Counted from the first letter of the stretch, positions 1,134 through 46,157 are shown. The stretch is DNA of 64,000 nucleotides from Dimorphilus gyrociliatus (GCA_904063045.1 CAJFCJ010000003.1:2776504-2840503), one strand, 5' to 3'. Numbers and translations: made by a program. The notes: generated from the sequence alone by a model not told the origin.

Positions 1134-1651
1134 ATGGCAAGCATGAGCGGAACTAACGACGCAGCTGATCAGAATTTTGATTATATGTTTAAATTGCTAA
1201 TTATTGGCAATTCTAGCGTTGGAAAGACGTCATTTCTATTTAGATATGCTGATGATAAATTTACACAAGCATTTGTCTCAACTGTTGGAATTGACTTTAA
1301 AGTTAAAACGATATTTAGGCAAGATAAAAGAGTAAAATTGCAGATATGGGATACTGCTGGACAAGAAAGGTTAACTAGACATTACAGCTTCTATTTTAAG
1401 AATTTTATTACAGTAGAAATTTTTTATTACTTAAACAGATATAGAACAATTACAACAGCATATTATAGAGGTGCTATGGGCTTTCTCTTAATGTATGACG
1501 TCACAAACGAGGAAAGTTTCAATGCTGTCCAAGACTGGTACGTTTTTAACACTTAATCATTTTCAATAGATAAATATTTTTTATTGAGTACAAAATATAG
1601 TCTGGCATTTATACATGTTCAACATTAAAAATATGCTGTATATATATACAG

Positions 1652-1688
<37 letters not shown>

Positions 1689-1938
1689 CATGATTAATCC
1701 AACACCATATAAGTAATTTTTCCTTCCTTCTTAAAGAAACACTCGAAGATTATAATAGTAATTCTATATGATTTATATCACTTAGTAACGAATGAAAGAA
1801 AGTCACATTGAGAATAGAATATATAACAATAATAATAAAATACCAAATTTAATTATATTATTTCAATTAATTGGCTTTCTTATTACTATTTAATGCTGCA
1901 ATACTTTCCTTTTTTTTTCGTATTCCATCTCTCTCTCC

Positions 1939-1992
<54 letters not shown>

Positions 1993-4052
1993 TTCTCTTT
2001 TGTCTATTACTACAAAGGTACATACATTGTATTCTTAGGAAAATACGATGAATGTATATTCAGTGTATATACTGTATATATATATATACAGTATATATAT
2101 TAGATACTATGTATACATTTATATATTGTAGGTCAAATAGAGCATATTTTTCTTCCACGTTCTATAAAAATCACATGATATTGAAAAATAAAAATTGTAA
2201 ACGTTTAGGATTTGTTTGTACTTGACAATAATGAAAAAATACATTTTTAAAATAGCATTTTATTGCACTTTATATATAAAAAAAAAATCAGAATATCTTT
2301 TTTTAATATATTAATAAAAGTTAATATTGTAAAAGTTAATTTTTTAAGACTTCTTCTATTCCCTCAAGTCATAGTGTTTTTTAATAATTTAGCTATATTT
2401 TGATACAGTATGTACTATTTGTAAAAGTAGATCTTATATATACATATATATCATCTTTATCTTCCTTTCATCTCATTCATCCCCTCCTCCCTCTTTTTGG
2501 ACACTATTCTGATTATTCTGATTATTAATCGAGATGTCGTTTTTTTAGTTATGAATTGTTTTGTTTTGGGGTGGGATATATAGTAGAATAGAGGAAAACC
2601 TAATATATATAATTAGACTGATATTTTATTCAAATGTGAAATAAAAGAAACACAAATAATAACAGGATTACACAAGTAGAAACTCATGCTCTGGCTAACA
2701 AGTCAATAATTTTAGTGGGGAATAAAAATGACCTTAATCTTGAAAGGCGTGTTCTAAGGAGGGATGGTGAAAGATTGGCGGCTGAATTAGGTATTTTTTC
2801 AATTAAAAGTGCAATATACACTATGAGGATTTAGATATATACATATATATATTTATGTATGTATATGTACGTATACATATATATGTATATATAGACGAAT
2901 TAATATTGATCCACTGCCAGTTGATTTTCTGTTTAATGCTGTGTTGCAAATGCAGCATAAACAAACACAAGTAGATGAACGAAATGAACTTTTGATAAAA
3001 AATAGAACATTTAATGCTTCTTTCCTCCCATTTTTTTAAATCCCTTCTCATCTAACAAAAACTTCAATGGCTTTTTTGTTTAATTCTTTCTATAAATAAC
3101 ATAATTTTTAATTAATGTTTATAAATTTAAATAAATTTAATTAATCTTAATTACTTAAACGGTGATGAATATGAATGAATTAATCATAAACTATTCAAAT
3201 GACGGGAAAAGCCATTAAGAGAAATACTGTATATATTCAATATAATTTTGTTCTTTTAGCTTCTATATACCTGAATTTGGTGAAAGATGGTGATGGTTAT
3301 TTTTTATTGTACAGGTCAACCCAAATTAAAAATTATTCTTGGGACAATGCTCAAGTAGTTTTGGTTGGCAATAAATGTGATTTAGAAAGTGAGAGAGTCG
3401 TATCCTCAGACAGGGGTAAAAGATTGGCAGACGAACTTGGTACGTTCGGTTTTTATTACTTATTGGATATGCAAAATGAAGAAGAAATTTCATTTTGCCT
3501 AATTAAATATTTAGATATATAAGTATTTTATGAAATCCTTTACAAATTAGATCAAATAACATATTTATATACAATCGCTCTCTCTTTCTCTCTCTCTATC
3601 TATCTCTCGCTTCTTCTTCTTGTCAGCGTCTTGTTATTCTTTTTTATTATTATTTGCTTTATCTTCATGATTTACATTTTAAAGTTGGAAAAAGTCTTTC
3701 TTCCTCTAAAACGATTAAATAAAGGAAGAATAAAAAGGGAAATTAAATTGTTCTGATGAATATTAAGGATTAAATATACTTTTTCTATTCATTAGAGCTT
3801 TTATATTTCTCTTATATACTAACTCCATAAAAATAATAAAACATGATGTTTTCATTTCCAGGAATAGAATTTTTTGAAACATCGGCGAAAGAAAATCACA
3901 ATGTTAAGCTAGTTTTTGAAAGGCTTGTTGATATCATTTGCGACAAGATGAATGAAAGTTTGGATTCCGATCCTGTAATTATGAGTCAAAAAGGAACTCA
4001 TCTTTCAAATGACACAGCATCAGGACCAGCCAACAGTAATTGCCAGTGCTGA
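1134..4052 (+). CDS. RAB3: Rab3 small GTPase, 216 aa; exons 1134-1369, 1439-1537, 3315-3439 (or alternative 2666-2790), 3862-4052
   Basis: [66 protein letters not shown] and a C-terminal CQC prenylation motif. GT-AG junctions with matching phases give 651 nt in frame. Confidence 0.96.
1658..1687. repeat. (TA)n microsatellite
   Basis: Direct reading of a TA run in Rab3 intron 2. Confidence 0.9.
1929..1990. repeat. (CT)n microsatellite
   Basis: Long CT run in Rab3 intron 2, upstream of the alternative exon. Confidence 0.9.
2666..2790 (+). CDS. RAB3: Alternative (probably mutually exclusive) exon 3 of Rab3, paralogous to 3315-3439
   Basis: aacag|...|gtatt flanks, 125 nt and the same phases as the canonical exon. 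Translates to [43 protein letters not shown], 21/43 identical by manual alignment. Absent from the supplied ORF track. Confidence 0.85.
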
Positions 4053-6096
4053 GGGAGAAGATAAAAATTAATTTTTTTCTCTTAAAGATATCTTTAATTG
4101 TCCTTAATTTATAATATATATATATTTCAAATTATTATTAAGAATGTTGTGATGTAATTTTTATCGGTAGCTTCTTAAAAATCTACTGCTGTTTCTAACA
4201 TTCCATATTAAGTGGACATAAATGTTACATATACTCTATATATGTAACACTATAGATTTATGTGTTCACAGTATACAATTGTTGTATACTTTACAATTTT
4301 ACGTTTGTGCTCGTTCTTTAAAAATATAATTATTTAATATGTTAATTAGCCAGTCTGCTCTTTGCTGAATTCTAGTCTTGAACGTATTACAAACATATAT
4401 CCATCTTTTATTATAATTGTTTACGATTGAAATAACATATATTAATATTTATAATCTTTAACCTGCACGATGTTTCTGTCACAGTTCAACTGTGATTGTC
4501 AGTGTTTGATTGATTGTTTTTAAATGTCCAATGATTGTTATTATGCAAAAAGAGAAAAACAGTAAAAACGTAATTTTTCCGTCTAATTTCAATTAATAAA
4601 CTATTCTAACACCTGCATAAATTGCTGTCTCATTATATTCATATTTTTATATACAAAATATTTATAGATAATAAGTTTCAGTATCCTTCTTTGAAGACTA
4701 TATGAAAAAGATTAGGAAATATTATTTTCCAGCTATCAAAGCCATTCTTGTGTCAGTTATTTGCAATGTTGTCGATGGGATAAGGCTGAAAAATTGCATT
4801 CATCTTTTAAGTTGTTTGTTATTAATAAAGTTGATGTAGAGTCTAATAAAAAGCTGCTGGGAAGACATTGTCCGAACTGAGTACATTTCCTACTCATTAA
4901 AACGAAAACGAATAGAAAGCTTTTATAAACCTCAGATAAAATGGTTTGACATATTGCATAAACTATGTATGTATTAGATCGTCATAAATAAGTCTTAAAG
5001 ACAGATTTTAGACAACAAAATTTTATTCTACGTTCCCATTGATCGTATAATTTAACACATATTCACATAAAAATATATTCACTCCGTCAACGGTTGCCTT
5101 GTTTGAATAACAAAACAAAAAGTATTATAGCTATTTTATTTTGCAGATACGCTTAATATTTCATTAAGAGAAATTAACCATTGCCTAAACGGTTCAAACA
5201 AATATTAACAAATTCCCTAACATGTTTTTTTTTACAAGTTGGCTACATGAAGGTCAATCACGAACACAGAAACAAAGGAAAAAATGCATGATATACACCT
5301 TCATGAACAAACAATGTTGGCACAATGGCTAAATCAGTTTCAAAAATAAACGAAAGCACTATCCAGGAGTCCAGGGGAAAAAACTCCAGTTAGTCGACAT
5401 TTATTATTTTTCGGAATTACGCTTGAATCGAAATTGGTTAAAAATTAATTCGTCGAAGTAGATCATCTGGCCGAATTTTCTTCCTGTTTAAAAAATATAG
5501 GTGTAAGTGTTGCAGAAACTTTCAAATTTTAATATTTATACAATAAAAAAAATGTAAAAAAAAAAAAAAAACAACTCTCATTCTAAAAACTAAAACGAAC
5601 TATAAGGATTGCAAAAGAATTAAACAGTTGAAATATTACTCAAAAGAAAACCTTTGAAAATTTCAAATTAGTCCAAAAGTCCTGGGATTTTTTCTCACGC
5701 TTAATTGAGTTGAGACGATAGAGCGTTTGACATAATGATTTGCTAGAAAAATAGAAAGAAACAATTTTTCATTCTAATTTATTTGTACATAATTATCATT
5801 GATAGCAAAAAAACAGGAATTTTGTTGAATTTTTTCTTATTAATTTTCGTTTATGTTCAAACTGTTTTTTTTTTATTTTTTCAAAAAAAATCTAAACCTA
5901 AACAATAGGTGCCGTTTTTAAGATAAAAAATATGTCCAAAAAAATATTCAATCTAGTTTACACACATAAAATCGTTCGTTTTCGTTTTCTAGAAAGTTTT
6001 CAAGATGCAAAATCTTCGATTTTGTTTATGGAAAATTCATAAATCGCCCTCGATCGTCGAATTTTATCCGTTTTTTTTTTAATACGACCACAAGCT

Positions 6097-6250
6097 ATAT
6101 ATATATATATATATATAAAGAATATATATATATGTATATATATATATGTATATATTTACCTACACATATATATACGTATATATACATACATATATATATA
6201 TATATATTAATATATATATATATACATATAGATATCTATATATATATATA
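6097..6250. repeat. Degenerate (TA)n low-complexity tract
   Basis: TA repeats interrupted by C/G; explains the spurious YI-rich ORF 6132-6383. Confidence 0.9.
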
Positions 6251-7025
6251 TCGTTATTATATGGGAACAACAGTTTTGTCGAAAAGCATCAATTACAATC
6301 ATAATTTGAGACAAATCAAAAAAAAAATTTTTTTATACAATGAGTTTGTACAAAGGAGAAAAACGTTACATAAAAATTTGTAGGTCAAATGTATTTGGGG
6401 GTAGGATTTACAGTGGTATTATAAACATTTTAAGTTTATCACGAATGCCATTGTTACACAAGCGAAATAATAGAAAAGTTAAGTCATGCCCAGTTAAAGA
6501 ACTGATTTGAGAGTTAAATTGGAAAAAGCCAAATAAATTCTGCATAGTTTATCAGGTTTTCTAGTTTATAAAATCTTCTCATTGGAAGGGTTAATTCTTC
6601 GATGTGTTTTTTTTGATATAGTGCATTAAAAATCTAGCTTTCAGACACTAACAAACAAAATTAAAGCTGATCATCTTAAAGGATTCCCTTTATCCACCCA
6701 TAGACAGAAAATGGCTAAGTATATAATAAAATTTAGAGACCAATTGGTGAAGAATAGATACAGTGACTAGATAGTTTAGGTGAAAAAGGAAAGAAAAAAG
6801 GTGAGATATTTACAAAACCACTGTTTACACCCTCCATCCTCCCAGTACATCTAGCCAAAAAATTCGTTAATGAACAGATATTTTTCGTTGTCAAAAATAA
6901 CTAAAACAGGTAACTCTTTTCGCAGGTAGGGCGTGATTATGACTTTAAAACATCATGTACATAAAATTGAGAAAGAGATGTGAAATTTTTTCAAAAATTC
7001 GTAAAAAATAAATTTAAAAAAATTT

Positions 7026-10000
7026 TTAATTCCATTCGTGTTGGTCGTACGAATCCTGATACCACGACTCGTCAGTAGCCTGTTGTTGCGGCTGTTGCAC
7101 AGCGAGCGGTTGCTGTGCAATAGGCTGCGCTTCAAAATGACCATCCACCACCTGAACTGGTGGTGGAGGTCTTCTCTTCGAAGCCGGCCCCCCTAGACCA
7201 CCTCCCATATTAGGAGCGCCCTTACGTTTTGGGGCAGCCATACCTCGCATCCCGGATTGAAGGTGTCCTCGTCCTCCCCGACCTCCGTACGCTGGGGGCC
7301 CAACGAATCCTCCGCCCCCACCGCGATTTGCTCCCCTATTGGTGCCACGATTGCCCCCGCCACGCTGTCCCATAGCCACCCGACCTCTGTGCGTACCACG
7401 GGGGCCAGGCTGCTGCTGCGTTACTGGTCCATGCTGAAGGATAAATACCCTGCAATATTTATAAATTGGTTCTAGAAAAATTTACCTACAGGAGCCGGAG
7501 CATGATGTCCACCTCTTCCTCGACCACGATGAGGAGGTTGAGGAGTGACTGGATGAGGAGAATATTCGGCAGAAAAGTCTTCATAACAGCCCCCGTAGGA
7601 GCTATAATCGTCGTAGCCATAGCCTTGGCCATACCCACTGTAATCGTCATAATAGTCCATTGGAGCAGCTGTTTCATGAACTAAAATTAGTTATTTACAC
7701 TCAACGACTTGCTGACTACGACTTTTTTGACGAAAGGAGAAAAGAAATATATTTTTGTCAAAAAACTCAATAATAAGCTAAACTCACGTGGTCTCATCAT
7801 ACCACCACGACCCCTCATACCTCCTCTGGCTATCCTACCTCTCATCATTGGTGGAGGTGGTCCGAAAGAAGCAGGTGGATAGCTGGAATAATAATCATCA
7901 TATCCCATATTCATATTATTGTCTCTTTCTCTTCTCATCCTCCTTTCTCGAGCTTTATTTTCATTGGCTGGTTTAGCTAAAGTTACATTGATTTCTACTT
8001 CATGTAGTTTGTAACCATTCATGGCCTCAAGGGCTGATAATGTACTATCTCGTTCTTTATAATGAACAAATCCATAGTCTTTAACTTTTTTGACTCGCTC
8101 AATTTCACCAAATGGCTCGAAGATTTTCTTCAATTCTTCTTCGGTAACGTTCGACCGTAAATTCCGAACGTACAATACTTTTACCTATTGAAATAAAAAG
8201 AAAATTTATACTAAAATAGCAATACTTTCCAACGTTAAAAAAAATATGAAAGCAACTCTTAAATAGAAAATTCTCTCAGCTTACAAAACTAAGTACCCAC
8301 ATATTACATCGTTACACGTTGATGTAATCGCTAATGTTGTTATCTCTGTTTTAACTTTAAAATATGAAACTATTTAATTGTATAACAATCGCGATAAAAG
8401 CATTCTTTAATAATTTATGTAATTCTAGTAAAAAGTAACCTTTGCCATTGTCTCTTCATCTGGTTCATCTTGGGGATCAGCCCAGTCTACAATAATCTCA
8501 CTACCCCAAACTCTTATTCTGCCACTAGCCAACTTCCTCTTAGCACCTGAAGCTGATTTATGAGTATCGTATTCTAGAAATGCAAATCCTCGATTTTTTT
8601 TCTTTGGATCATCAGGAAATGCATAAACTATAACTTCTCTCAAGCCTTCCGTTAACTTTTTGAATTCTTCCAATATATCTTCACGAGATTTGTTTTTTGG
8701 TATATTTCCAACAAACAATCGCACATTCGCAATTGAAACATTAACCTGAAGTTTCTTATTCGGTTTAATTTCATAATTATTTAATTGTTTAGCAGCTTCT
8801 CTTGCTGCTTCAGCTGTGGTGAATGTTACGAAAGCATATCCCCTGTTACAGCCTTGCATGGGATTCATCATCAGTCGAAGATCCCAGATGGTGCCAAATT
8901 TTTCAAATACTGGAATCAGATCGTCTTCATATACTGTTTTAGGTATGCGTCCAACAAAGCATTCGTGCCCATTGCCAGGTGGACCACCATCCCAACTGGG
9001 GGGTGGACCACCATATTTTCTTTGACCTGTTGTTATTTCCAAGGCATATCCCGTCCGATCAAGGATTTCCTGGGAATGAATATCAAGATTAGAATAGATA
9101 TTTATCTAATCTATAATTTTTTCTATCTTATTTAAAAATATATTTCTATTTTATCAATTATCTGTTTTAGAAAAATAGAGTAAAAAACGAAAGAACAAAT
9201 TGAGTTGTTTTAGTAATTATTAGGTGTAGTTTCTGAGACTGAGAATAGCACGTAATACACTCAATGACCCAATATCATGAACATGACAAACAAGTTCATT
9301 TTTCCTATGGCATAAAGACATAAAGCAATATCGATAGGCTTAAAATGCAAACGAGGAATTCAACACCTCAGTAATTTTGTACATAGGATTCCTTACTAGA
9401 CGTTTCCATGTTTAATCAATACAATACTAAATTCTCTTTATTTAAGGGTAATTTTACAAGTAATAGTATTATATTAATGAAATGAATCCTTCTTTCTATA
9501 TTGAGTAGCAAAATTTCACTATATACTATAAATTTTATCAAAAATTGGCTATCTTTGTTAAATCTTAATCAGTAATTACATAAGACCCTCAAGGTTATAT
9601 CGTCCAAAAGTTGAACTGTCCATTAGCAATAATCTACTGTTGATCTAAGATTAAGCCTTCTGTTGGACATTAATGCTTAAAATCACATTCAAATATTTTT
9701 GTCAAAACCAGCTATAGGTTTAATTTGATATCAAATGTCACCTTAAGTTTGAAATTAGTTTAAAATACACGTTCGAAAGTCGAATATGCTATAATTCCTA
9801 ACAGAAGATGTTGCCTTTTACCCTTACAGACTATGTCACATACCATGCATACAAGATATGATTAGAATATTAAGGGTTATACAAGTCGAAGCTCAACTAT
9901 GGTTTCTATAATGTTAAAAATTAACCTTTAATTTCTTTTCGTCTGGTCCATTCGTTACAGCCGGTTTATCCTCGCCTAAGCTTTGTTTTTGTCTGTAAGT

Positions 10001-10485
10001 CTTCATAACACCACAGATATAAGCACTTTTATTATTTACATGCTGTAAGTTGCTGTCAGCTAAAAGTTGCTTAAGAACTGCGATAGCACATTCTATAGGA
10101 AAGTCTCTTATTGCTTCTAGGGCTCTAGGATCCAGATCATCATAAGTCACAAGTTTTGCTTGAAATAGCTTCTCTAATTCATCGGCCACTGTTGTATCTA
10201 GACCGAAATCGACTAACTTCTTATGATCTTCTGATTTTTCGACTGTTTCAACATCTCCCCCACCGCCATTTTCCGTAGATGGAGCTTGATCATCTGTAAA
10301 ATGCGTTTAGATTATGTAAAATGTAACTTAATTTGATTCGGCGTTTTTGGACGAAACAACGAGGCCAACATGTCTGCCGACTTCGGCGATTAGTTTTAGT
10401 TTATAATATCCTATATTTTGATCTTTATTCTTAGGCAAATTCTTGATAAAGTCATAAATAAGAATTCATGAACTATACCTGACAT
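7026..10485 (-). CDS. SYNCRIP: hnRNP Q/R (Syncrip) RNA-binding protein; exons 10485-10479, 10293-9926, 9069-8440, 8184-7788, 7680-7490, 7433-7026
   Basis: N-terminal helical domain (LDPRALEAIRDF...NKSAYICGVMKTY), ITTGQRKYGGPPP, three RRMs (ECFVGRIP, RLFVGNIP, KVLYVRNL), RGG/Y-rich tail and WYQD C-terminus. All junctions are GT-AG and phase-consistent. Confidence 0.95.
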
Positions 10486-12036: not shown

Positions 12037-12358
12037 ACTCCCGGAGTGAAAAAAAAAAGTAATGGCAGCTGAGCATTCTAACGTGTTGACACATACTCTT
12101 TAAAAATACCTGGTTTAATTAGTCTTGAATCTCATGTTTCTAGCACTCGAAGGCCTTCACTGGAGCAGAGAGAAGAAAGAGGGGATATAAATCTTTTTAG
12201 TTGAGGAATTTACTAAAATAACTACTCTTTTTTATACTTTAAGTTGGTTTTCTCTTACTATTTTATAGCTAAATTTAAACTTGACTAAGATAGAAAGCAC
12301 GCCGGTTTGAATAGTAGAAAACTTTTTATTTTGACTAGATAAGAATAAATGATATGGA

Positions 12359-28463: not shown

Positions 28464-30612
28464 ATGAAAATCTATGATTATTATTACAGCATTTGTTTCT
28501 TTAATTTAATTAACTATTCTTTATGTTCTGGTATTCGCTGCAATCCTAGTGCTAGTATTGATACATTCCTCTACTGTACTAATGATTATCTACCAGGCTA
28601 TTTAGAGTTAAATGACCTTAATAGAAATTTATCATTAGTATCATCAATGTTTCTTACCTGCGCGAAAACTGTTCGAGATAATTATTCAAATTATACAATA
28701 AATGAGAATTTATCGTTTTTGAAGATTATTAATTGTAACGAAAGGATATTAATTAAAATTACTTCAAAGATTAATGAAATTAGTCTAATTGACTCTTCAT
28801 TACCACTTTTCACACAAGTATTTTACATTTTTCTTTCATTTATCCATCATACTAATTTATCATCGTGTCCTACAACTAGAATTATACAGTATCTACAATC
28901 TCTATAAGTTTTAAAAAGCAGTATAGGCCTATAATGTTGAAAAATAAGAATAATAGTTTAAAAATAAAAGTAAAAAGTTTATGGATAGAATCAAAATTGA
29001 ATTATATAAAGTATAAAGATATAATAGATGGATTAGATATAATACAATCATTCCATATTCTACGCAAAGTTTGTTTAGATAATCTCGACCTGAAAAGCTT
29101 AAATATAAGTAAATTAACAACGTTTTACGCCATCAATTGGAATAATAGATTAGATAAATTATTTAAATTATTTAATACTTCTTTAAATATAAAGAGTTGT
29201 ATTTATATAGAAAATGGTAGAATGAAAGAATGTAAAAAATCATTAAAAGTATTTGAAGCTGATAGATTTAAATGTTTTATTAATAAAGAAAACGAAAAAC
29301 AAATTATCTGCTCTCTATCCGAATTTCCATTAGAGGATTACAGTAATAATCTTATTAATTTGTTGAAGATTAATAGTTATATCAAAGATTTATTAATAAC
29401 TTGTAATTATTTTATGAGATTACCGAATGATATTAAAAGAGATTTAATTGTTGTCCTCCATAAAAGATATCGTATTGAAACACTCAGAATTATGGGATGT
29501 ACTAATAGAAGAGATATTATATGTAAAAACTGCAAATTTACCAATGTTTACTTGTATAATTTCAACAATAAATGCCTATTTAGATATTCTCAAAATACGT
29601 ATATTTTTGATACTGTTTCAAAAGGTTGCGGTACGACTGGTAACCTTTTTATCGATTCAATTAAAAAGTCGATAACGATATGGAATATTCAATTGTTTAC
29701 TAGTAATAACTTAAGAATTATCAATAATCTTATAGTTAAGAGTAAAATTATCCTTACTAATCCTTTAAGGGATAATCCTAAAGAATTAAAAAATGTTTTA
29801 ATTTCTCTAAATGGTTCGTTAATTATTCCCAAACTTCATGGTTGTATTAACGATAAACAATGGTTAATCGATGTATTCCGTTATAGGTTAATGAAATATG
29901 GAACAAAAGTTAATATCAATTATATTAATTAACTAATTTATCTTATCTTATTCATATTATTCTCCAATAGAATGCAAGAGATATTTTAGGAATTTCTAAT
30001 TGCGTTTGTTACAAGACAAATACAAATAATACAGAATTCTATCAATTAATGAATATTAATGATAGCCTAATTTCTTTTAATTTCAAAGTAAATAGCTGTA
30101 AAGCTATTGGAAATCTAATAGAAAATGAACTAAAGCCTAGAACAATATCATTTGTTACGGACGCTTCGTTGGGATCAAAATCTACTTATTCAATATATCT
30201 AGTACTTTTCGGTACTATCGTATTCTGCGGATTGATTATTCTATTAGGAGTATTATTCTTCGGCGTTCATACACCAATAGATTCAACATTAACCAATAAC
30301 GAACTATCTAGAATAGAAAATTTAAAAAAATTAAAAGAGAAATTATCTCTTAAATATAATGAAAGTAATGAAATTTTCAATAATATTGATGTATTATATA
30401 AAAGGAAATTACGTAATTACGAGAGAAAGATAAAGAGAGATAAGAAATTATCAAAAATACTTAAAGGAAGAGCAATAATTAGAAGGAGTTTCTGTTTATG
30501 TAAAATATTTAGTTTACTATTTTATTTTCAGTATAAAAAACAGATTTTGGACGAACGTAATCGAGTTATAAATGATTTAGTTGACGAGAATGATAAATAT
30601 ATAAATGAGTAG
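28464..30612 (+). CDS. Uncharacterised type-I membrane protein with degenerate LRR-like ectodomain; exons 28464-28817, 28880-29908, 29971-~30612
   Basis: Three collinear ORFs join in frame through two 62-nt GT-AG phase-0 introns (28818-28879, 29909-29970). Possible signal peptide, LxxLxIxxC/N-like motifs, one TM segment (IYLVLFGTIVFCGLIILLGVLFF) and a basic/coiled-coil tail. A further small intron near 30490-30530 is possible. Confidence 0.65.
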
Positions 30613-30711: not shown

Positions 30712-32969
30712 CTATGATTCACTATTCAATAGTGTGCAATAATTTTTCCATCTATTTAGGCAATGCTGTCGTTGTTCCCTTAATTTTGCTAATATTACAT
30801 CGTCTGCAAATTCTTCCTCATCTGATTCTAGAATAGAATCGAGAACTTTTTCAAATTCTAAACCATTCTGCTCTTCTTTCAAATTGTCTTCTTCGTTTTC
30901 AACAGCCTCAACAAAATCTCTTTCCGGTACTTCCTGTTCTAAGCCGTAAATAGATTTTTCTATAACGTGACTGATTGTATCTTCGACCCTTTCTTTAATC
31001 TGACCGTCTGGAGTGTTTGTTAGAGTTTCATTCTCCTCAATTTCTAAGCTTAATTGAACGTCTGTTTCTGTATCAACCATTTTTTTTTCACCATTTGTTT
31101 GACAACCAGTAGAGCATAGTACAATTTCCTGTTTGTCAGCAATTTCTCCTTTTTCCTCCTTTTCTACTTCAAACTTGTTAAAATTAGTTTGACAACTTGT
31201 GGATAATGTTTGTAGAATTGGTGTTGTTATTTTGTCAGCTGGTATCGTCAAACCAACTTCCGGTGTATTGTCTTTACTCTCCGCGACATGAGACGCACTA
31301 CAATGGCAAAAGCTAGAAGAGGATGGTGGTTGTAAAAGCAGGGAAGTGTTTCTATTGAATCTTTGTAAAGAAGGGGATATTTGTTTGCCAGACACTCGGA
31401 ATGTAAACGATTTTAATTCTTTTCTCATATCTGCAACCTTGTCTTCCAAGCTTTTAATATCCTGTACAGTAATGAAAGTGCAACCGTAATTAAGGTAAAA
31501 AAAATAGACAAAATTCAATGTTACAAACAGTTTCGTCTATGTTTTCCCTGGGTTTTGGTTGCTGCGGTTGATATTTTCGTTTTGCTCTCCATTCCGCAAG
31601 AATATCGTTGCTTTTGGCGATGAGATCTGATTTATCTAATTGAATTTTCGATTGAGAATATTGTGGGCGGTTTGGTAGCTTCTGTGAAACGCTTGTTAAA
31701 TGCGATGATAAATCTGATGAGTCGTGAGATTTTAAGCCATCCGTTGATACGAGAGCAATGCATTCGTTATCAGATGCTAAACTGGAGCTTCTTTTATTTT
31801 TAATAAAGAAAATAGTTAATCAAATCGTAAAATAAAGAATTTAATTAATTACTTTTCTATTAATTTATCAGCTTTGGCTTGCAATTCTAAAAAGGTTCTG
31901 TCTCTCCAAGGATTATTCGACTCAATACTTTGTCTAAGTAACTACAAGAAAGAATTTATACATATATTAGATATATATGTATATACATTATAATACTGTA
32001 TACTATACTGTATACTGTATGTAATCTTAATAACTTAAGTGACTATTAATTGCTCACTTCTTCCTCTAAGTTCTTTCTTTCTTCTCTTAAATCATCAAGT
32101 GTTTTGAAAGATTTTTGATTATCTTTTAACCACCAGAAATCTTTTTCGTTTGGCTTACTACGTTCCTCCCTACTCTTTGGCTCTTCTGTACGAAATCTTT
32201 CTAAATATCTATAAGAGAAAGAAAGAGAAATAATCATACGTTTGTCCGAAAATAATAGTTACTTGGCAACTGTAGAGGAATCTGCACTGTTATTTTCTTT
32301 ATAAGAATCGATATCATTTTCTATTGAGGTTGTAGAATCTTTACCATCGTAAGATTTTGAATTATAACGTTTAACATCTTCTCGCCTTTTGAAATAGTTG
32401 TCAACTCTTTTAGGGATTCTTGTAGATCTTTTAGTGTAATTTTCCTTTGCTCTCTGAGGCTTTCTGCAAGGCAGAAAGCACTAGTTGATTTATGTGTAAT
32501 ATATTTAGTATTTCATTTACTCACTTTGCATCTACAGTTGGTGAGGACCAGCTCTCAGTTAATTTTTTATCATACTAAGTGGATTCAATTAGTTGTATTA
32601 TTTTGACGAATACTTTAAATGGAGCTATTCATTACCTTTTCTTGATCTATTATGGGCCAGTCTGATAAGAATCTACTGGATGACTCAAGAGGTTCTTGCA
32701 TAGCATCTGATGGAAATTTTCTTTGTGAACCTATGGCAGAATCACGTAGACATTTTGGAAGATTTAGGTCTGGTGTTGGCATATAAAACGAGCGGGGAAA
32801 CTCTTGAGAGTTGAACGGACTAGCAAACAGAAACGTGCTTATACATGAACGTTTGAGCGATAATAAAGCATACAGAATGTTGTTTAATTAAACAGTTGAT
32901 ATTTGATATCAAAATTACCTCGAAGTCATAGAGAAAGTGGAGATCAGAGTCAATTTTCATCAAATTCAT
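30712..32969 (-). CDS. PROSER3: PROSER3-like protein (multi-exon; ends approximate)
   Basis: Spliced exons give VAK|YLERFRTEEPKSREER...DFWWL, LQAKADKLI and C-terminal EEFADDVILAKLREQR, matching the short conserved blocks I recall from PROSER3/C19orf55. Confidence 0.65.
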
Positions 32970-42555: not shown

Positions 42556-45500
42556 CTAATCGATTTCATCATCTAAACTATGTTGATTTAATTTATAACT
42601 ACCGTATCTTTTGCAAGTTGAATGAATTGATGATTCATAAAGATTATAGTTTAGTTCACTTGTTCTAAACCTTATTAATGGGTTACCATAAGAAAAAAAT
42701 CCTATAAATTTTTTATTTTCATTGCCATTCGACGTTGTTCCTTGTCCGTTAGGAAGAGAATTATTATGTATTACTTCCATTACAGCTGTATTTTTCTGCA
42801 AGCTTCTCCTCCTAATAAATTTCTGTATTTTTAACGCAGCTCTATTCCTTTCAACGATTGTTTTTAGTTTCTTTCTTAAAATATAACTTTTCCAATATTT
42901 TGTAATTGTAATAACATTTTTTCTCTTAATATTTAAATAATAATTTTCAATTGAATTATTTGCCAAATCATTCATAAATATTCCAGTTTTGCCAAATTTT
43001 ATACTCTTTTCAAATTCAGGTATATTAAGAGATTCTAGAAATTTTTCAATAGCATCTCTCAGTTCTTTATCATTATCGACATTTTGAGTAGGAAGACGAT
43101 AATTTCTATGTAATAAATCATACTTATGGCTGAAAATGTATCATTTTTTATCAATTGTATATATTTGAGGTTTAATAATATTCATTTTAATATTTTAGAA
43201 TTTATTTTACTTATACTTACAAGTATGGATAATCTTTCTGGGTTAAATATACCTCCTGTACTATACCACTATTCTTAAGTTGCTGATACAAATAACATCC
43301 ATTTATTTCAACGCCATTTTGGTGATTTTGTGCAGTTATATTAGATGGTTTAAAACATCTTACGAAGCGTTCTTCTGTTTTTTCAAGTAGTTTTATCAGA
43401 TTTTCAACCGATACCTAAATGTTTGGAGAAAGAGAGCATAAGATATAAAAATTCCTTCTCTCAAATCAAATTAATATACTCTATGTTCGGTTAATAATGT
43501 ATGTCGACGTCTATTAGTTGTAAATTTTTTATCATCTACATTATTATTATCAATTAGATTCCTTATAAATGAACTCTCGCTATTTGATATTAAACTTGTC
43601 CAAGTTCTTATATCCGCGGCCGAATTCTTTTCCACCATACCAATTATTGAATATTCAACATTTTTCGCGTAATGGCTAATAACAAATGTAGACGTATGAG
43701 GTTTCGGTTTAATTAATTTAGATTGTTGACAATTTAAACATAAGCTATCCATAACTGCCTTCTTCGCAAAGTTATTTTTCATTACAACTGGCTGTATAGA
43801 TGAAATATTTTACTAGAATTTTAATAGAATTAATTAAGCATCTAACTAATAACATACGTCATTTAAAGCTGAAAATAATAATTCTGAAATTTCATCTGAA
43901 GTTTTTGACACATGTTTCCAAAGGTTATTTCTCTCAACGTCCAGACCCTCCTCAACAAATTTTTTTTGTTTATCTATTACGCATACAGTTAAATAATGGT
44001 CTTGAAGTTTTTCGTTGGCAAAATTGATTGATAGCTGTTCTAGTGAATTTACTTCCATTGATTCAAAACCAAATATATCAAGAATTTGAATTGTCTTAAT
44101 AGTCTCTATAGACGGTGATAAATCTTGGTTTATTTTTTTTACAATAAATGAAAAAGTTCTGAAAACAATATATAATTAATAAACTTTTGGGAAGCGAAAA
44201 ATAATCAACGCTTTTTCTGTGCTCTATTTCATAGCAACACAATATTACAGAGTTAAATACAGATTTGTTGCTAGGTAGCACAGAAAAATCCTCGGTATGT
44301 AATACTAACCTACAATACAGAAATTCTATGAAACTATTCAATCGTTCTTTTGCTTCTCCGGCTGAGTATTGAACAACGAAAACGCTCTTTCTCCTCGTTC
44401 CAGCTCGTAGCTGTCGGGTCGATATTGCTCTTAAAATTTCCGTATAGTCTAATAGAAGAGCATTTTCAATAAGATTTAAAGCCTCGTTGATATTTCCTCT
44501 TTTGAAGATTGGTTGAGCAATTGCACAATCTTCTTCCTTTTCAAAATCAATTCTCTTTAGAAGAATAAGCGATGCTATTAATTGCATTAAGCCATCAATT
44601 TCGTGTTGTTCAAAATTTGTTTGTCTTAACGAATTTATAGTTTTGTTCAAATTTGATTGGCCTTCATTTTCATTAATGCCATATTTTCCAAGATATTTAG
44701 TCAATTCAGATTTAGGCAAACCTAAGAGCTAAAGGGTTACATATTAGTATAAAAGGTCACAAAAAATAAAGGAACAACGAAGGAATTACTTGATAAAAGA
44801 TGTGAAAATTAGATAATTCCAATGAATGAACTCTCATTTTTTCAAGTAAAACAGCGTCTATATTAGCTCCGACCATTGTCTTTTTCCTATGAGTAATTAT
44901 ATTTCTTTGTAAGATAAGAGATTCTAGTAAAGATAAGCAAACAAAAACTCTTACGAATCAAAGTAAATCCTAATCAATTTGACAAATCTTGAGGAGTTTG
45001 TGTTTAAATTCGTTTTAGCGTTTCCCATAGCTTCAAGTAGAGCATTCGATTCGATTAAACGCCTTTCTATGGCTTTTTCGTTCAAATGCCCATTTCTTGA
45101 TGCAAAATAATTTATTAAATGCTTCACATTTTCCGTTTTTCCAGACCCACTTTCTCCAGTTACAACGATGCTATTCACTTTTGCATCATTTTGAAAAGTC
45201 TCCTCAGCTATTTGATAAATATGAGGCTCGTGTGCTAAACCTTTTAAATATTCAATCATTTTCTCATTGTTGTATAAACTCTTAATTGTCTTCATAGGAT
45301 TTAAAGCAAATAATGTTCTACCACATTTCGTATAGATTCTATTATCTTTATATCGTTGAATTAATGCCATAAGTATAGATCCAATATGAATATTATTTAA
45401 ATTAGATAGGTCACAATAATTCTTTAGAGTGTAGTTAATTTCCTCATCTTTTCTTATTTCTGACCTATTTAGCTAAAATATCAAATGTTAAACTCTATTA

Positions 45501-45892
45501 ACACAGTATCCATTTTAAAAGACAGCTTGAAAGTTACCGATATTTGTTCTTTTGTCAACTTGATGACAATTTGCATCTTATTTACAGAACTTCCTCTGAA
45601 AATTCCTAATAGTTCATCTTTCCGATAAACGTAGAATGTACTCTTCTGGAAAAAAGATCATTATAGCAATAGTTTTATTTCTCTTATCTATAGGCCTACT
45701 TTAACTGTTAACAGAAATTTGAAAAAAAATATAATTTACTTTAGAATAAAATTACACATTGACTTATTGATTGCTTCACTGACAGCTTAATTTTTTTTAC
45801 TATTATTGGTTTAGTTTGATAGTATGGTTTGTAACCTTATTTAAGGAATCCATGTAAAATTTACAATTTGAAGATTCGTCGAAAACCGCCAT
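42556..45892 (-). CDS. MYO19: Unconventional myosin, most like myosin XIX (motor, IQ motifs, short tail; 5' exons approximate)
   Basis: YTKCGRTLFALNP..LYNNEKMIEY, P-loop GESGSGKT, NSSRFVK, DIFGFESMEVNSLEQLSINFANEKLQ, converter FGKTGIFM, IQ-like ITKYWKSYILRK and IQKFIRRR, short tail. Confidence 0.8.
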
Positions 45893-46157
45893 GTTCAATT
45901 TTATGCTGTCACGTGACAAAAATATACCGACTTCCTGTTTATTATTGCAGTCATGAAAACTGTTATATAAAAAGTTTTTGTTCAAATTTTAAAACAATTC
46001 CAACTATTTATAGAATATTTTCAGAGAGCTAAACTTTATTATAACAGTTAATAACATTTTATACGTTTAAAATGAAAGGCATATATTAGATTAAACATCG
46101 CTGTCAGATCAAACAATTACGTATAGTCATTCAGATGGCGTTAATATGCGCAATAAC

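What the first reader, a model, noticed from the sequence alone, without database searches (positions are those of the whole stretch)
2666..3439. Rab3 carries a duplicated, apparently mutually exclusive exon that swaps the effector-binding loop
Seen in sequence: inside Rab3 'intron 2' is a 125-nt AG/GT-flanked exon (2666-2790) of identical length and phase to the canonical exon (3315-3439). It is stop-free and 21/43 identical, keeping the G4 motif as GNKND instead of GNKCD. Including both exons or neither shifts the frame, so only one-or-the-other gives protein. Established knowledge: the alpha3-beta5 loop (YSWDN) of Rab3A is one of the Rab complementarity-determining regions contacting rabphilin-type effectors, and mutually exclusive exons are known in Rab6A. 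Inference: the alternative isoform (HALAN in place of YSWDN) is a GTP-binding Rab3 variant with altered effector specificity. I know of no such Rab3 isoform.
Basis: partly seen in the sequence, partly recalled or inferred. Interest (0 to 1): 0.82.

Follow-up and report, generated by a model that had tools for sequence, protein, structure and literature searches.

The report
Swappable exon pair in worm Rab3
The synaptic-vesicle GTPase gene Rab3 of the tiny annelid Dimorphilus gyrociliatus holds two either/or copies of one 125-base exon; nemerteans, molluscs and a brachiopod have the same pair, so it is old and real, but it is already in sequence databases, though I found no paper describing it.

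Summary
Window 2666-2790 and 3315-3439 are homologous 125-nt exons of a Rab3 gene. They share phase, have AG/GT borders and are stop-free. Using both or neither shifts the frame.

The genome is Dimorphilus gyrociliatus. Its deposited protein DgyrCDS2562 already uses the "alternative" exon, not the canonical one.

The same pair, alternative exon upstream and both exactly 125 nt, lies in the Rab3 genes of a nemertean and a chiton. The alternative version also appears in annotated Rab-3 proteins of gastropods and bivalves, including several RefSeq "isoform X2/X3" records, and in isoform X2 of a brachiopod.

Three diagnostic residues separate the classes. Canonical exons have Y123, S124 and Q129. 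Alternative exons have H123, A124 and S or C at 129. The worm's exon has the alternative state at all three.

Bdelloid rotifers duplicated the same exon independently, with the new copy downstream. Intronless transcripts carry either copy.

The swapped segment covers the alpha3/beta5 loop (RabCDR2), beta5 with the G4 motif, and alpha4. Altered partner binding is therefore plausible but untested.

An RNA run holds all sampled words of the exon.

Verdict: a new member of a known kind (RAB6A and RAB37 have such exon pairs), of moderate interest.

The parts
1134..1368 (+). Rab3 exon 1 (start codon; G1/P-loop, switch 1, through DTAGQE)
   Evidence: Splicing and translation by script. Identical to deposited protein P0057. 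Gene range in the NCBI record equals window 1134-4052.
1438..1537 (+). Rab3 exon 2 (switch 2 to the end of AVQDW; ends with TG of a split Trp codon)
   Evidence: 97.5% identical to the equivalent exon of L002, L006 and L007.
2666..2790 (+). Alternative ('HA-type') exon 3a, 125 nt: end of alpha3, alpha3/beta5 loop (HALAN), beta5 with G4 as GNKND, and alpha4. This is the exon used in the deposited gene model DgyrCDS2562.
   Evidence: Orthologous exons in Tubulanus, Liolophura and L002 have identical length and phase. Diagnostic H123/A124/S129. All 7 sampled 31-mers are held by RNA run X2. AF2 pLDDT is 71-93 over the region.
3315..3439 (+). Canonical exon 3b, 125 nt (YSWDNAQ loop, GNKCD). Not used in the deposited model, but about 85% identical to the canonical exon of other phyla.
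   Evidence: pN is 0.10-0.14 against nemertean, chiton and L002 canonical exons, with synonymous sites saturated.
3862..4052 (+). Last coding exon (beta6, G5 SAK, alpha5, hypervariable tail, CQC prenylation motif, stop TGA 4050-4052)
2261..2283 (+). Upstream arm of an inverted repeat whose partner (2794-2816) starts 4 nt after the donor of exon 3a. It could loop out exon 3a, but it is not statistically supported.
   Evidence: the repeat finder I4, 23 nt, 83% complementary. RNAduplex gives -19.7 kcal/mol, equalled by 16 of 300 dinucleotide shuffles.
2794..2816 (+). Downstream arm of the same inverted repeat

Best explanation
The Rab3 gene of Dimorphilus gyrociliatus carries an ancient tandem duplication of its 125-nt third coding exon, and the two copies are spliced as mutually exclusive exons. 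Exon 3b (3315-3439) encodes the bilaterian-wide canonical segment with the YSWDNAQ loop. Exon 3a (2666-2790) is the fast-evolving 'HA-type' copy that arose before annelids, molluscs, brachiopods and nemerteans diverged.

Because 125 is not a multiple of 3, mRNAs with both exons or neither carry a premature stop. Only one-or-the-other messages give a full Rab3. This frame check, probably with nonsense-mediated decay, is the likeliest basis of exclusivity (inferred). The weak A-rich acceptor of 3a suggests that its use depends on trans-acting factors (inferred).

Both isoforms keep every nucleotide-binding element. They differ in the alpha3/beta5 loop (RabCDR2/RabSF3), the beta5-alpha4 loop and the exposed face of alpha4. 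The most likely consequence is two Rab3 forms with different affinities for partners that read this surface, such as rabphilin-type effectors (inferred, not tested).
For: Anatomy of the pair and frame arithmetic.

Organism and deposited model using exon 3a. The annotation pipeline gave PASA transcript assemblies weight 10, against 1 for ab initio predictions and for Capitella/Helobdella protein alignments (PMC7854359). Choosing the diverged exon over the 85%-conserved one therefore points to transcript support.

RNA run X2 holds 7/7 sampled words of exon 3a, and RNA run X16 holds 0.43 of them.

The same pair, alternative copy upstream, both 125 nt with AG|G...G|GT borders, occurs in Tubulanus (L006), Liolophura (L007) and the unidentified animal contig L002.

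Annotated proteins carry the HA-type exon in place of the canonical one in Lingula, Haliotis (two species), Littorina, Batillaria, Patella, Pecten, Ylistrum, Saccostrea and Liolophura.

Y123/S124/Q129 are invariant in 24/24 canonical exons. H123/A124 occur in 14/14 alternative exons and S/C129 in 13/14. The worm's exon 3a has H, A and S.

In the ML tree all 15 upstream alternative exons, including the worm's, fall on one side of a branch with support 77/89.

For alternative exon pairs pN is 0.28-0.40 while synonymous sites are saturated. The worm is no outlier: Dimorphilus-L002 is 0.283 and L002-Liolophura is 0.295.

The worm's changes avoid universally conserved positions: 13/17 kept against 8/25 elsewhere, Fisher p = 0.011.

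The AF2 model of the exon-3a isoform gives helix 103-119, loop 120-124, strand 125-131 and helix 143-153, with pLDDT 71-93.

The chiton alternative exon matches Rab3A-D chains best (43-45 bits for Rab3A-C and Drosophila Rab3 near 42, 38 for Rab3D, at most 31 for other GTPases). This indicates duplication within Rab3 rather than capture from another Rab.

CDR2 is the alpha3/beta5 loop: PMC4552854 and PMC5902227.
Against: No transcript-derived protein of 119 aa or more with the worm's exon 3a exists in the protein collection apart from the genome model.

I have no direct evidence that the canonical exon 3b is spliced in this species; only its strong conservation supports that.

Exon 3a has a long terminal branch (1.25 against 0.17 changes per site). 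It has lost the otherwise invariant W125 (now L) and K121 (now E), and it has a poor polypyrimidine tract. Recent loss of function cannot be excluded from sequence alone.

WDN-to-AAA in Drosophila Rab3 CDR2 had no phenotype in the assay used, so a functional difference between isoforms is not assured.

I could not examine any other annelid.
Confidence: 0.8

Rival explanations
1. In Dimorphilus only exon 3a is used. The canonical exon 3b is an unused relic, so the gene makes one divergent Rab3.
For: The only deposited protein uses 3a. RNA run X2 holds all words of 3a.
Against: Exon 3b is about 85% identical in protein to canonical exons of other phyla. Its pN is 0.10-0.14 with synonymous sites saturated. 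It has intact AG/GT borders and the better acceptor. That degree of constraint is not expected of an unused exon. The NCBI record appears to hold one product for this locus, so absence of the second isoform from the deposit says little.
Confidence: 0.07
2. Exon 3a is a decaying duplicate in this lineage, taken into the gene model by the predictor. Only the canonical isoform is functional.
For: Long branch, W125L, K121E, C137N and a weak A-rich acceptor. No transcript-derived protein with it in the collection.
Against: The 125-nt length, phase, both splice sites and an open frame are kept in a 27% GC genome. NKxD and 13 of 17 universally conserved residues are kept, and changes are concentrated at variable sites, p = 0.011. 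pN is no higher than between other phyla's alternative exons. The annotation pipeline favoured transcript evidence tenfold. An RNA run holds every sampled word.
Confidence: 0.1
3. The pairs in different phyla arose by independent duplications, so the worm's exon 3a is not orthologous to the mollusc, brachiopod and nemertean alternative exon.
For: Bdelloid rotifers show that this exon can duplicate independently. Support for a single clade of upstream alternative exons is only 77/89 on 42 columns.
Against: The order is the same in every trochozoan locus examined: alternative upstream, canonical downstream. The derived states H123, A124 and S/C129 are shared. The best tree already unites them.
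Confidence: 0.1

Closest known systems
Annotated Rab-3 proteins of molluscs and a brachiopod with the HA-type exon: RefSeq isoforms X2/X3 of Lingula anatina, Haliotis rufescens, H. rubra, Pecten maximus, Ylistrum balloti, Saccostrea echinata and Liolophura sinensis, and GenBank models of Littorina, Batillaria and Patella
   Same: The orthologous alternative exon: same position in the gene, 125 nt where I checked the DNA (Liolophura), and H123/A124/S-or-C129 in place of Y/S/Q.
   Different: Those exons keep W125 and mostly C137 (THAW...GNKCD). The worm's copy reads THAL...GNKND and is the most diverged of the class. They exist only as database records; I found no paper on them.
RAB6A / RAB6A' (human; duplicated exon spliced mutually exclusively). 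From my own knowledge: Echard et al. 2000, not read here.
   Same: A Rab GTPase that makes two isoforms by either/or use of a tandem-duplicated exon. The isoforms differ in partner binding rather than in nucleotide binding.
   Different: A different Rab subfamily, and only three residues differ. I did not check here whether the exon covers the same structural elements.
RAB37 tandem-exon-duplication substitution event (PMC8373072)
   Same: An ancient mutually exclusive exon pair in a Rab of the Rab3-related secretory group. The differing residues form a surface patch proposed to change interaction partners. It is conserved between vertebrates and Drosophila.
   Different: A different gene (the Rab26/37 lineage). 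I did not compare the duplicated segments.
Bdelloid rotifer Rab3 exon pair (Adineta, Rotaria)
   Same: The same 125-nt exon is duplicated, with the same phase. The new copy also has His at position 123. Intronless transcript contigs carry one copy or the other.
   Different: The extra copy lies downstream of the canonical exon, keeps S124, has its own signature (THSWEKTP) and forms a separate clade with 100/99 support. It is most likely an independent duplication.
Vertebrate Rab3A-D paralogues
   Same: Several Rab3 proteins made in one organism.
   Different: They arose by gene duplication, and all keep the YSWDNAQ loop. The exon swap diversifies a surface that the vertebrate paralogues leave unchanged.

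Membership tests
Rab3 subfamily of Rab GTPases | Best sequence matches are Rab3 proteins over the whole G domain | tested here: met
   P0057 against PDB: Rab3C, 3B, Drosophila Rab3, 3A and 3D score 284-326 bits; Rab8A scores at most 218.
Rab3 subfamily of Rab GTPases | Nucleotide-binding motifs G1 (GNSSVGKT), G3 (DTAGQE), G4 (NKxD) and G5 (SAK), and a C-terminal CXC prenylation motif | tested here: met
   All are present in both spliced ORFs. G4 is NKND in the 3a isoform and NKCD in the 3b isoform. The tail ends in CQC.
Rab3 subfamily of Rab GTPases | Rab3-type RabCDR2 loop (YSWDN), invariant in canonical Rab3 | tested here: not met
   Met by the 3b isoform and not by the 3a isoform (HALAN). 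This is the point of the isoform difference.
Mutually exclusive exons from tandem exon duplication | Adjacent homologous exons of equal length and phase, each with its own splice sites | tested here: met
   Both 125 nt, AG|G...G|GT, 20/42 residues identical.
Mutually exclusive exons from tandem exon duplication | Including both or neither is incompatible with the reading frame | tested here: met
   Both: stop 18 codons into exon 3b. Neither: stop 4 codons into the last exon.
Mutually exclusive exons from tandem exon duplication | Mature transcripts of this species contain exactly one of the two exons, and each is seen | tested here: inconclusive
The deposited model has 3a only. RNA run X2 holds all 3a words. 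I have no evidence either way for 3b transcripts.
Mutually exclusive exons from tandem exon duplication | Both copies conserved in other species, with isoforms using one or the other | tested here: met
   Genomic pairs in Tubulanus, Liolophura and L002. Single-exon annotated isoforms of both types in molluscs and a brachiopod.
RNA-structure-guided (docking/selector) mutually exclusive splicing | Competing, significant base-pairing between a docking site and a selector next to each exon | tested here: inconclusive
   The best pairing flanking exon 3a (2261-2283 with 2794-2816) is matched by 16/300 shuffles. Places 2060-2110 were left out. No cross-species conservation test was possible.

The most novel reading that the evidence does not exclude
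Trochozoan animals (annelids, molluscs, brachiopods, nemerteans) have kept, for over half a billion years, a one-gene, two-isoform Rab3 system. An exon switch rewrites the otherwise invariant RabCDR2 loop and the alpha4 face, giving two vesicle Rab3 forms with different effector or regulator sets, possibly used in different neuron or secretory cell types. Bdelloid rotifers reached the same solution independently, down to the Tyr123-to-His change.
Probability: 0.35. Interest if true: 0.62.

Novelty: new member of a known kind. Interest (0 to 1): 0.5.

Why it matters
Rab3 is a central regulator of synaptic and dense-core vesicle release, and it is a single gene in most invertebrates. Several classic neurobiology models are molluscs or annelids, for example Aplysia, Lymnaea, octopus and Platynereis.

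If their single Rab3 gene makes two proteins that differ on the surface used to recognise rabphilin-type effectors, two things follow. Studies that clone or knock down "Rab3" in these animals may be looking at only one of two forms. And the pair offers a natural experiment on what RabCDR2 and alpha4 contribute to partner choice.

The independent re-duplication of the same exon in bdelloid rotifers, with the same Tyr-to-His change, suggests this segment is a preferred place to tune Rab3. There is also a practical point: gene predictors mis-handle the pair. Some models read both exons in tandem, and the worm's only deposited protein is the non-canonical isoform.

Tried and rejected
So there are no junction counts.

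2. I could not hand the spliced canonical isoform to the protein look-ups. It has no reference, and I did not type a 216-letter sequence. That step was left out.

3. The big protein search with the 41-aa exon peptide gave only 8 weak hits. None was the worm's own, but they led to the rotifer and 'THAW' exons.

4. A word search restricted to the worm's exon 3a found only the deposited model.

5. The Lingula isoform X2 locus was not on record.

6. The organisms behind L002, P0006 and GCA_003358065.1 could not be identified. I could not obtain a Rab3 locus from any second annelid.

7. RNA pairing as the exclusivity mechanism is not significant.

8. Capture of the exon from another Rab (Rab8 or Rab27) was rejected, because the chiton alternative exon matches Rab3 chains best by 7 bits or more. 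For the worm's diverged copy the margin is small: Rab3D 26 bits against Rab5a/Rab8A at 21-22 bits.

9. Literature searches for a described Rab3 mutually exclusive exon found none. This holds only for the open-access library searched.

Full report
**What is in the sequence**

Reading and splicing the window by script gives a five-exon Rab3 gene on the + strand:

| Exon | Coordinates | Note |
|---|---|---|
| e1 | 1134-1368 | start codon at 1134 |
| e2 | 1438-1537 | ends with TG of a split Trp codon |
| 3a | 2666-2790 | "alternative", 125 nt |
| 3b | 3315-3439 | canonical, 125 nt |
| last | 3862-4052 | stop TGA 4050-4052 |

- Exons 3a and 3b both start with the third base of a split Trp codon. 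Both are bordered by AG and GT and are open in that frame.
- Using either one gives a 216-residue protein.
- Using both gives a stop 18 codons into 3b. Using neither gives a stop 4 codons into the last exon.
The DNA shares 67 of 125 bases.
- The loop reads HALAN against YSWDN, and G4 reads GNKND against GNKCD.
- A masked tblastn found no third copy in the window.

**Which organism, and what is already on record**

A profile search returned "DgyrCDS2562 [Dimorphilus gyrociliatus]" (P0057, 216 aa), whose sequence contains exon 3a. The profile was built from a full-length rotifer Rab3 plus the window's own exon peptides. The exact-sequence look-up places this protein on GCA_904063045.1, CAJFCJ010000003.1. 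Its gene range of 2919 bases equals window 1134-4052.

So the deposited gene model of this miniature annelid already uses the "alternative" exon and omits the canonical one. The genome paper states that EvidenceModeler gave PASA transcript assemblies a weight of 10. Ab initio predictions and alignments of Capitella and Helobdella proteins each got a weight of 1 (PMC7854359). Protein alignments would favour the conserved exon 3b. The choice of 3a is therefore indirect evidence that an assembled transcript contained it. This step is inference.

**Direct RNA evidence in the worm**

The index of public runs shows that all 7 sampled 31-mers of exon 3a are held by a metatranscriptomic RNA run (X2). 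A second RNA run (X16) holds 0.43 of them.

I could not go further. No transcript-derived protein with the worm's exon 3a is in the protein collection apart from the genome model. Junction-level proof in this species is still missing, for 3a and for 3b.

**The pair is old and widespread**

The exhaustive protein search with the 3a peptide gave only eight weak hits. These included single-exon ORFs reading THAWDNTS, and read-through ORFs with two Rab3 exon copies in tandem. Following them up gave three kinds of evidence.

1. Genomic pairs. The Rab3 genes of the nemertean Tubulanus polymorphus and the chiton Liolophura sinensis, and the unidentified animal contig L002, each hold an HA-type exon upstream of a canonical exon.

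| Locus | HA-type exon | Canonical exon |
|---|---|---|
| Tubulanus (L006) | 28518-28642 | 31315-31439 |
| Liolophura (L007) | 45144-45268 | 45852-45976 |
| L002 (unidentified) | 10048-10172 | 12175-12299 |

   All six exons are exactly 125 nt with AG|G...G|GT borders.

2. Annotated proteins. Models of Lingula anatina (X2), Haliotis rufescens (X3), H. rubra (X2), Pecten maximus (X2), Ylistrum balloti (X2), Saccostrea echinata (X2), Liolophura (X2), Littorina, Batillaria and Patella carry the HA-type exon in place of the canonical one.

3. Mis-annotated models. Two submitter models, from Batillaria and Nucella, read both exons in tandem with the HA-type copy first.

Only a single, canonical copy was found within the Rab3 loci of Schistosoma turkestanicum, the hemichordate Ptychodera flava and the monogonont rotifer Brachionus plicatilis. 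In Brachionus an assembly gap lies just upstream of the exon, so absence is less certain there.

**Orthology of the worm's exon 3a**

Column counts over 24 canonical and 14 alternative exons, in Rab3A numbering, show three class-diagnostic positions:

| Position | Canonical exons | Alternative exons | Worm exon 3a |
|---|---|---|---|
| 123 | Y, 24/24 | H, 14/14 | H |
| 124 | S, 24/24 | A, 14/14 | A |
| 129 | Q, 24/24 | S or C, 13/14 | S |

The worm's 3a has the alternative state at all three, and it lies upstream of the canonical exon like the others. A maximum-likelihood tree of the 42 columns puts all 15 upstream alternative exons on one side of a branch (support 77/89). With so few columns this is suggestive, not proof.

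The chiton alternative exon matches Rab3A-D structures best: 43-45 bits for Rab3A-C, 38 for Rab3D, and at most 31 for any other GTPase. The class therefore arose by duplication inside Rab3, not by capture from another Rab.

**Is the worm's copy still under selection?**

It has the longest branch in the tree, 1.25 against 0.17 changes per site for 3b. It has also lost W125 and K121, which are otherwise invariant in both classes.

Against decay:
- Length, phase, splice sites and open frame are intact in a 27% GC genome.
- NKxD and 13 of 17 universally conserved residues are kept, against 8 of 25 matches to the class consensus elsewhere (Fisher p = 0.011).
- Non-synonymous difference to other alternative exons is 0.28-0.40 while synonymous sites are saturated. 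This is no worse than between the other phyla; for example, L002-Liolophura is 0.295 and Tubulanus-Liolophura is 0.344.
- Canonical exons evolve much more slowly (pN 0.01-0.13).

The alternative class as a whole is thus constrained but freer than the canonical one. A recent loss of function in Dimorphilus alone cannot be excluded from sequence.

**How it most likely works**

Shown:
- Two homologous, frame-incompatible exons.
- Conservation of both across phyla.
- Annotated isoforms with one or the other.

Inferred:
- Exclusivity rests mainly on the reading frame. Double-inclusion and skipped mRNAs carry premature stops and are probably removed by nonsense-mediated decay.
- The intron between the exons is 524 nt, too long for steric exclusion.
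- Competing RNA pairing is not supported. The best pairing that would loop out 3a (2261-2283 with 2794-2816) is matched by 16 of 300 shuffles.
- The poor pyrimidine tract before 3a suggests regulated, factor-dependent use.

**What the swap changes in the protein**

The exon runs from Rab3A residue 117 to 158. An AlphaFold2 model of the 3a isoform puts it on the end of helix alpha3 (to residue 119 of the worm protein), the loop 120-124, strand beta5 125-131 with G4, and helix alpha4 143-153. pLDDT is 71-93 there, although the whole model is only moderate (mean 69).

The alpha3/beta5 loop is RabCDR2, which overlaps RabSF3. It is one of three regions lining the pocket that rabphilin-3A binds besides the switch regions (PMC4552854, PMC5902227).

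The class differences fall in this loop (positions 123, 124, 126, 129) and on alpha4 and the loop before it (positions 142, 146-149, 151-152, 155-156). The core and the nucleotide-binding residues are shared. A change in partner recognition is the most economical reading, but nothing here tests it. A WDN-to-AAA change in this loop did not impair the function assayed at the fly neuromuscular junction.

**A second, independent duplication**

In bdelloid rotifers (Adineta, Rotaria) the same 125-nt exon is duplicated with the extra copy downstream of the canonical one (L001, L003). That copy has its own signature, THSWEKTP, and forms a separate clade with 100/99 support. It shares the Tyr123-to-His change.

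Full-length proteins with only the extra copy are encoded without introns on two JGI contigs (L011 and L012). Canonical-only ones sit on other contigs of about 1 kb. In rotifers, then, either/or use is seen in transcripts.

**Comparison with what is known, and novelty**

Mutually exclusive exon pairs from tandem duplication are known in Rab GTPases. RAB6A/A' is known to me from memory. RAB37 is conserved between vertebrates and Drosophila (PMC8373072).

For Rab3 I found no description in the searchable literature. The isoforms do exist as database records, including the worm's own deposited protein. I therefore rate this a new member of a known kind. It is real and ancient, of moderate interest to people working on synaptic vesicle Rabs in molluscs and annelids, and not categorically new.

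Earlier notes of this scan list many other either/or exon pairs in the same genome, in other genes. One of those notes gave me the species name, which I then confirmed independently.

Noticed in passing
L001 413-537 and 662-786; L003 399-523 and 648-772; L011/L012 3-692: Bdelloid rotifer Rab3 carries its own tandem duplicate of the same 125-nt exon, downstream of the canonical copy and with the same Tyr123-to-His change. Intronless JGI contigs encode the isoform that has only the extra copy. This is probably an independent, convergent duplication.
   Followed up: partly
window about 5660-7050 and beyond, minus strand (L005 7530-8919): The neighbouring gene downstream of Rab3, on the opposite strand, is annotated as a 616-aa product with hnRNP_Q_AcD and RRM domains, i.e. 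an hnRNP Q/SYNCRIP-like RNA-binding protein.
   Followed up: no
P0032 (Batillaria), P0036 (Nucella), P0012 (Adineta vaga): Submitter gene models read both Rab3 exon copies in tandem into one protein. This is a likely mis-annotation caused by the either/or pair.
   Followed up: no
window 1368/1438 versus L006, L007, L002: The intron before the switch-2 exon sits at a different place in Dimorphilus (after DTAGQE) than in the nemertean, the chiton and L002 (before DTAGQ). This suggests intron sliding, or loss and gain, in the compact genome.
   Followed up: no
window 1655-1690, 1921-1990, 2830-2895: The 1128-nt intron before exon 3a and the start of the next intron hold (TA)n and (TC)n microsatellites and TA-rich palindromes. 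Places 2060-2110 tripped the reads tool's filter and were not used further.
   Followed up: no
window 2261-2283 and 2794-2816: A 23-nt inverted repeat with an 11-bp perfect core (TATTGCACTTT / AAAGTGCAATA) brackets exon 3a. It could loop the exon out, but pairings this good occur in 5% of shuffles.
   Followed up: yes
P0006, P0008 (L004, GCA_003358065.1), L002 10048-10172: Three unidentified animals have HA-type exons (THAWDNTSV...) that are the closest relatives of the worm's exon 3a. Two of them, like the worm, lack Cys at the G4 position (NKAD, NKTD). They may be annelids, but I could not identify the organisms.
   Followed up: partly
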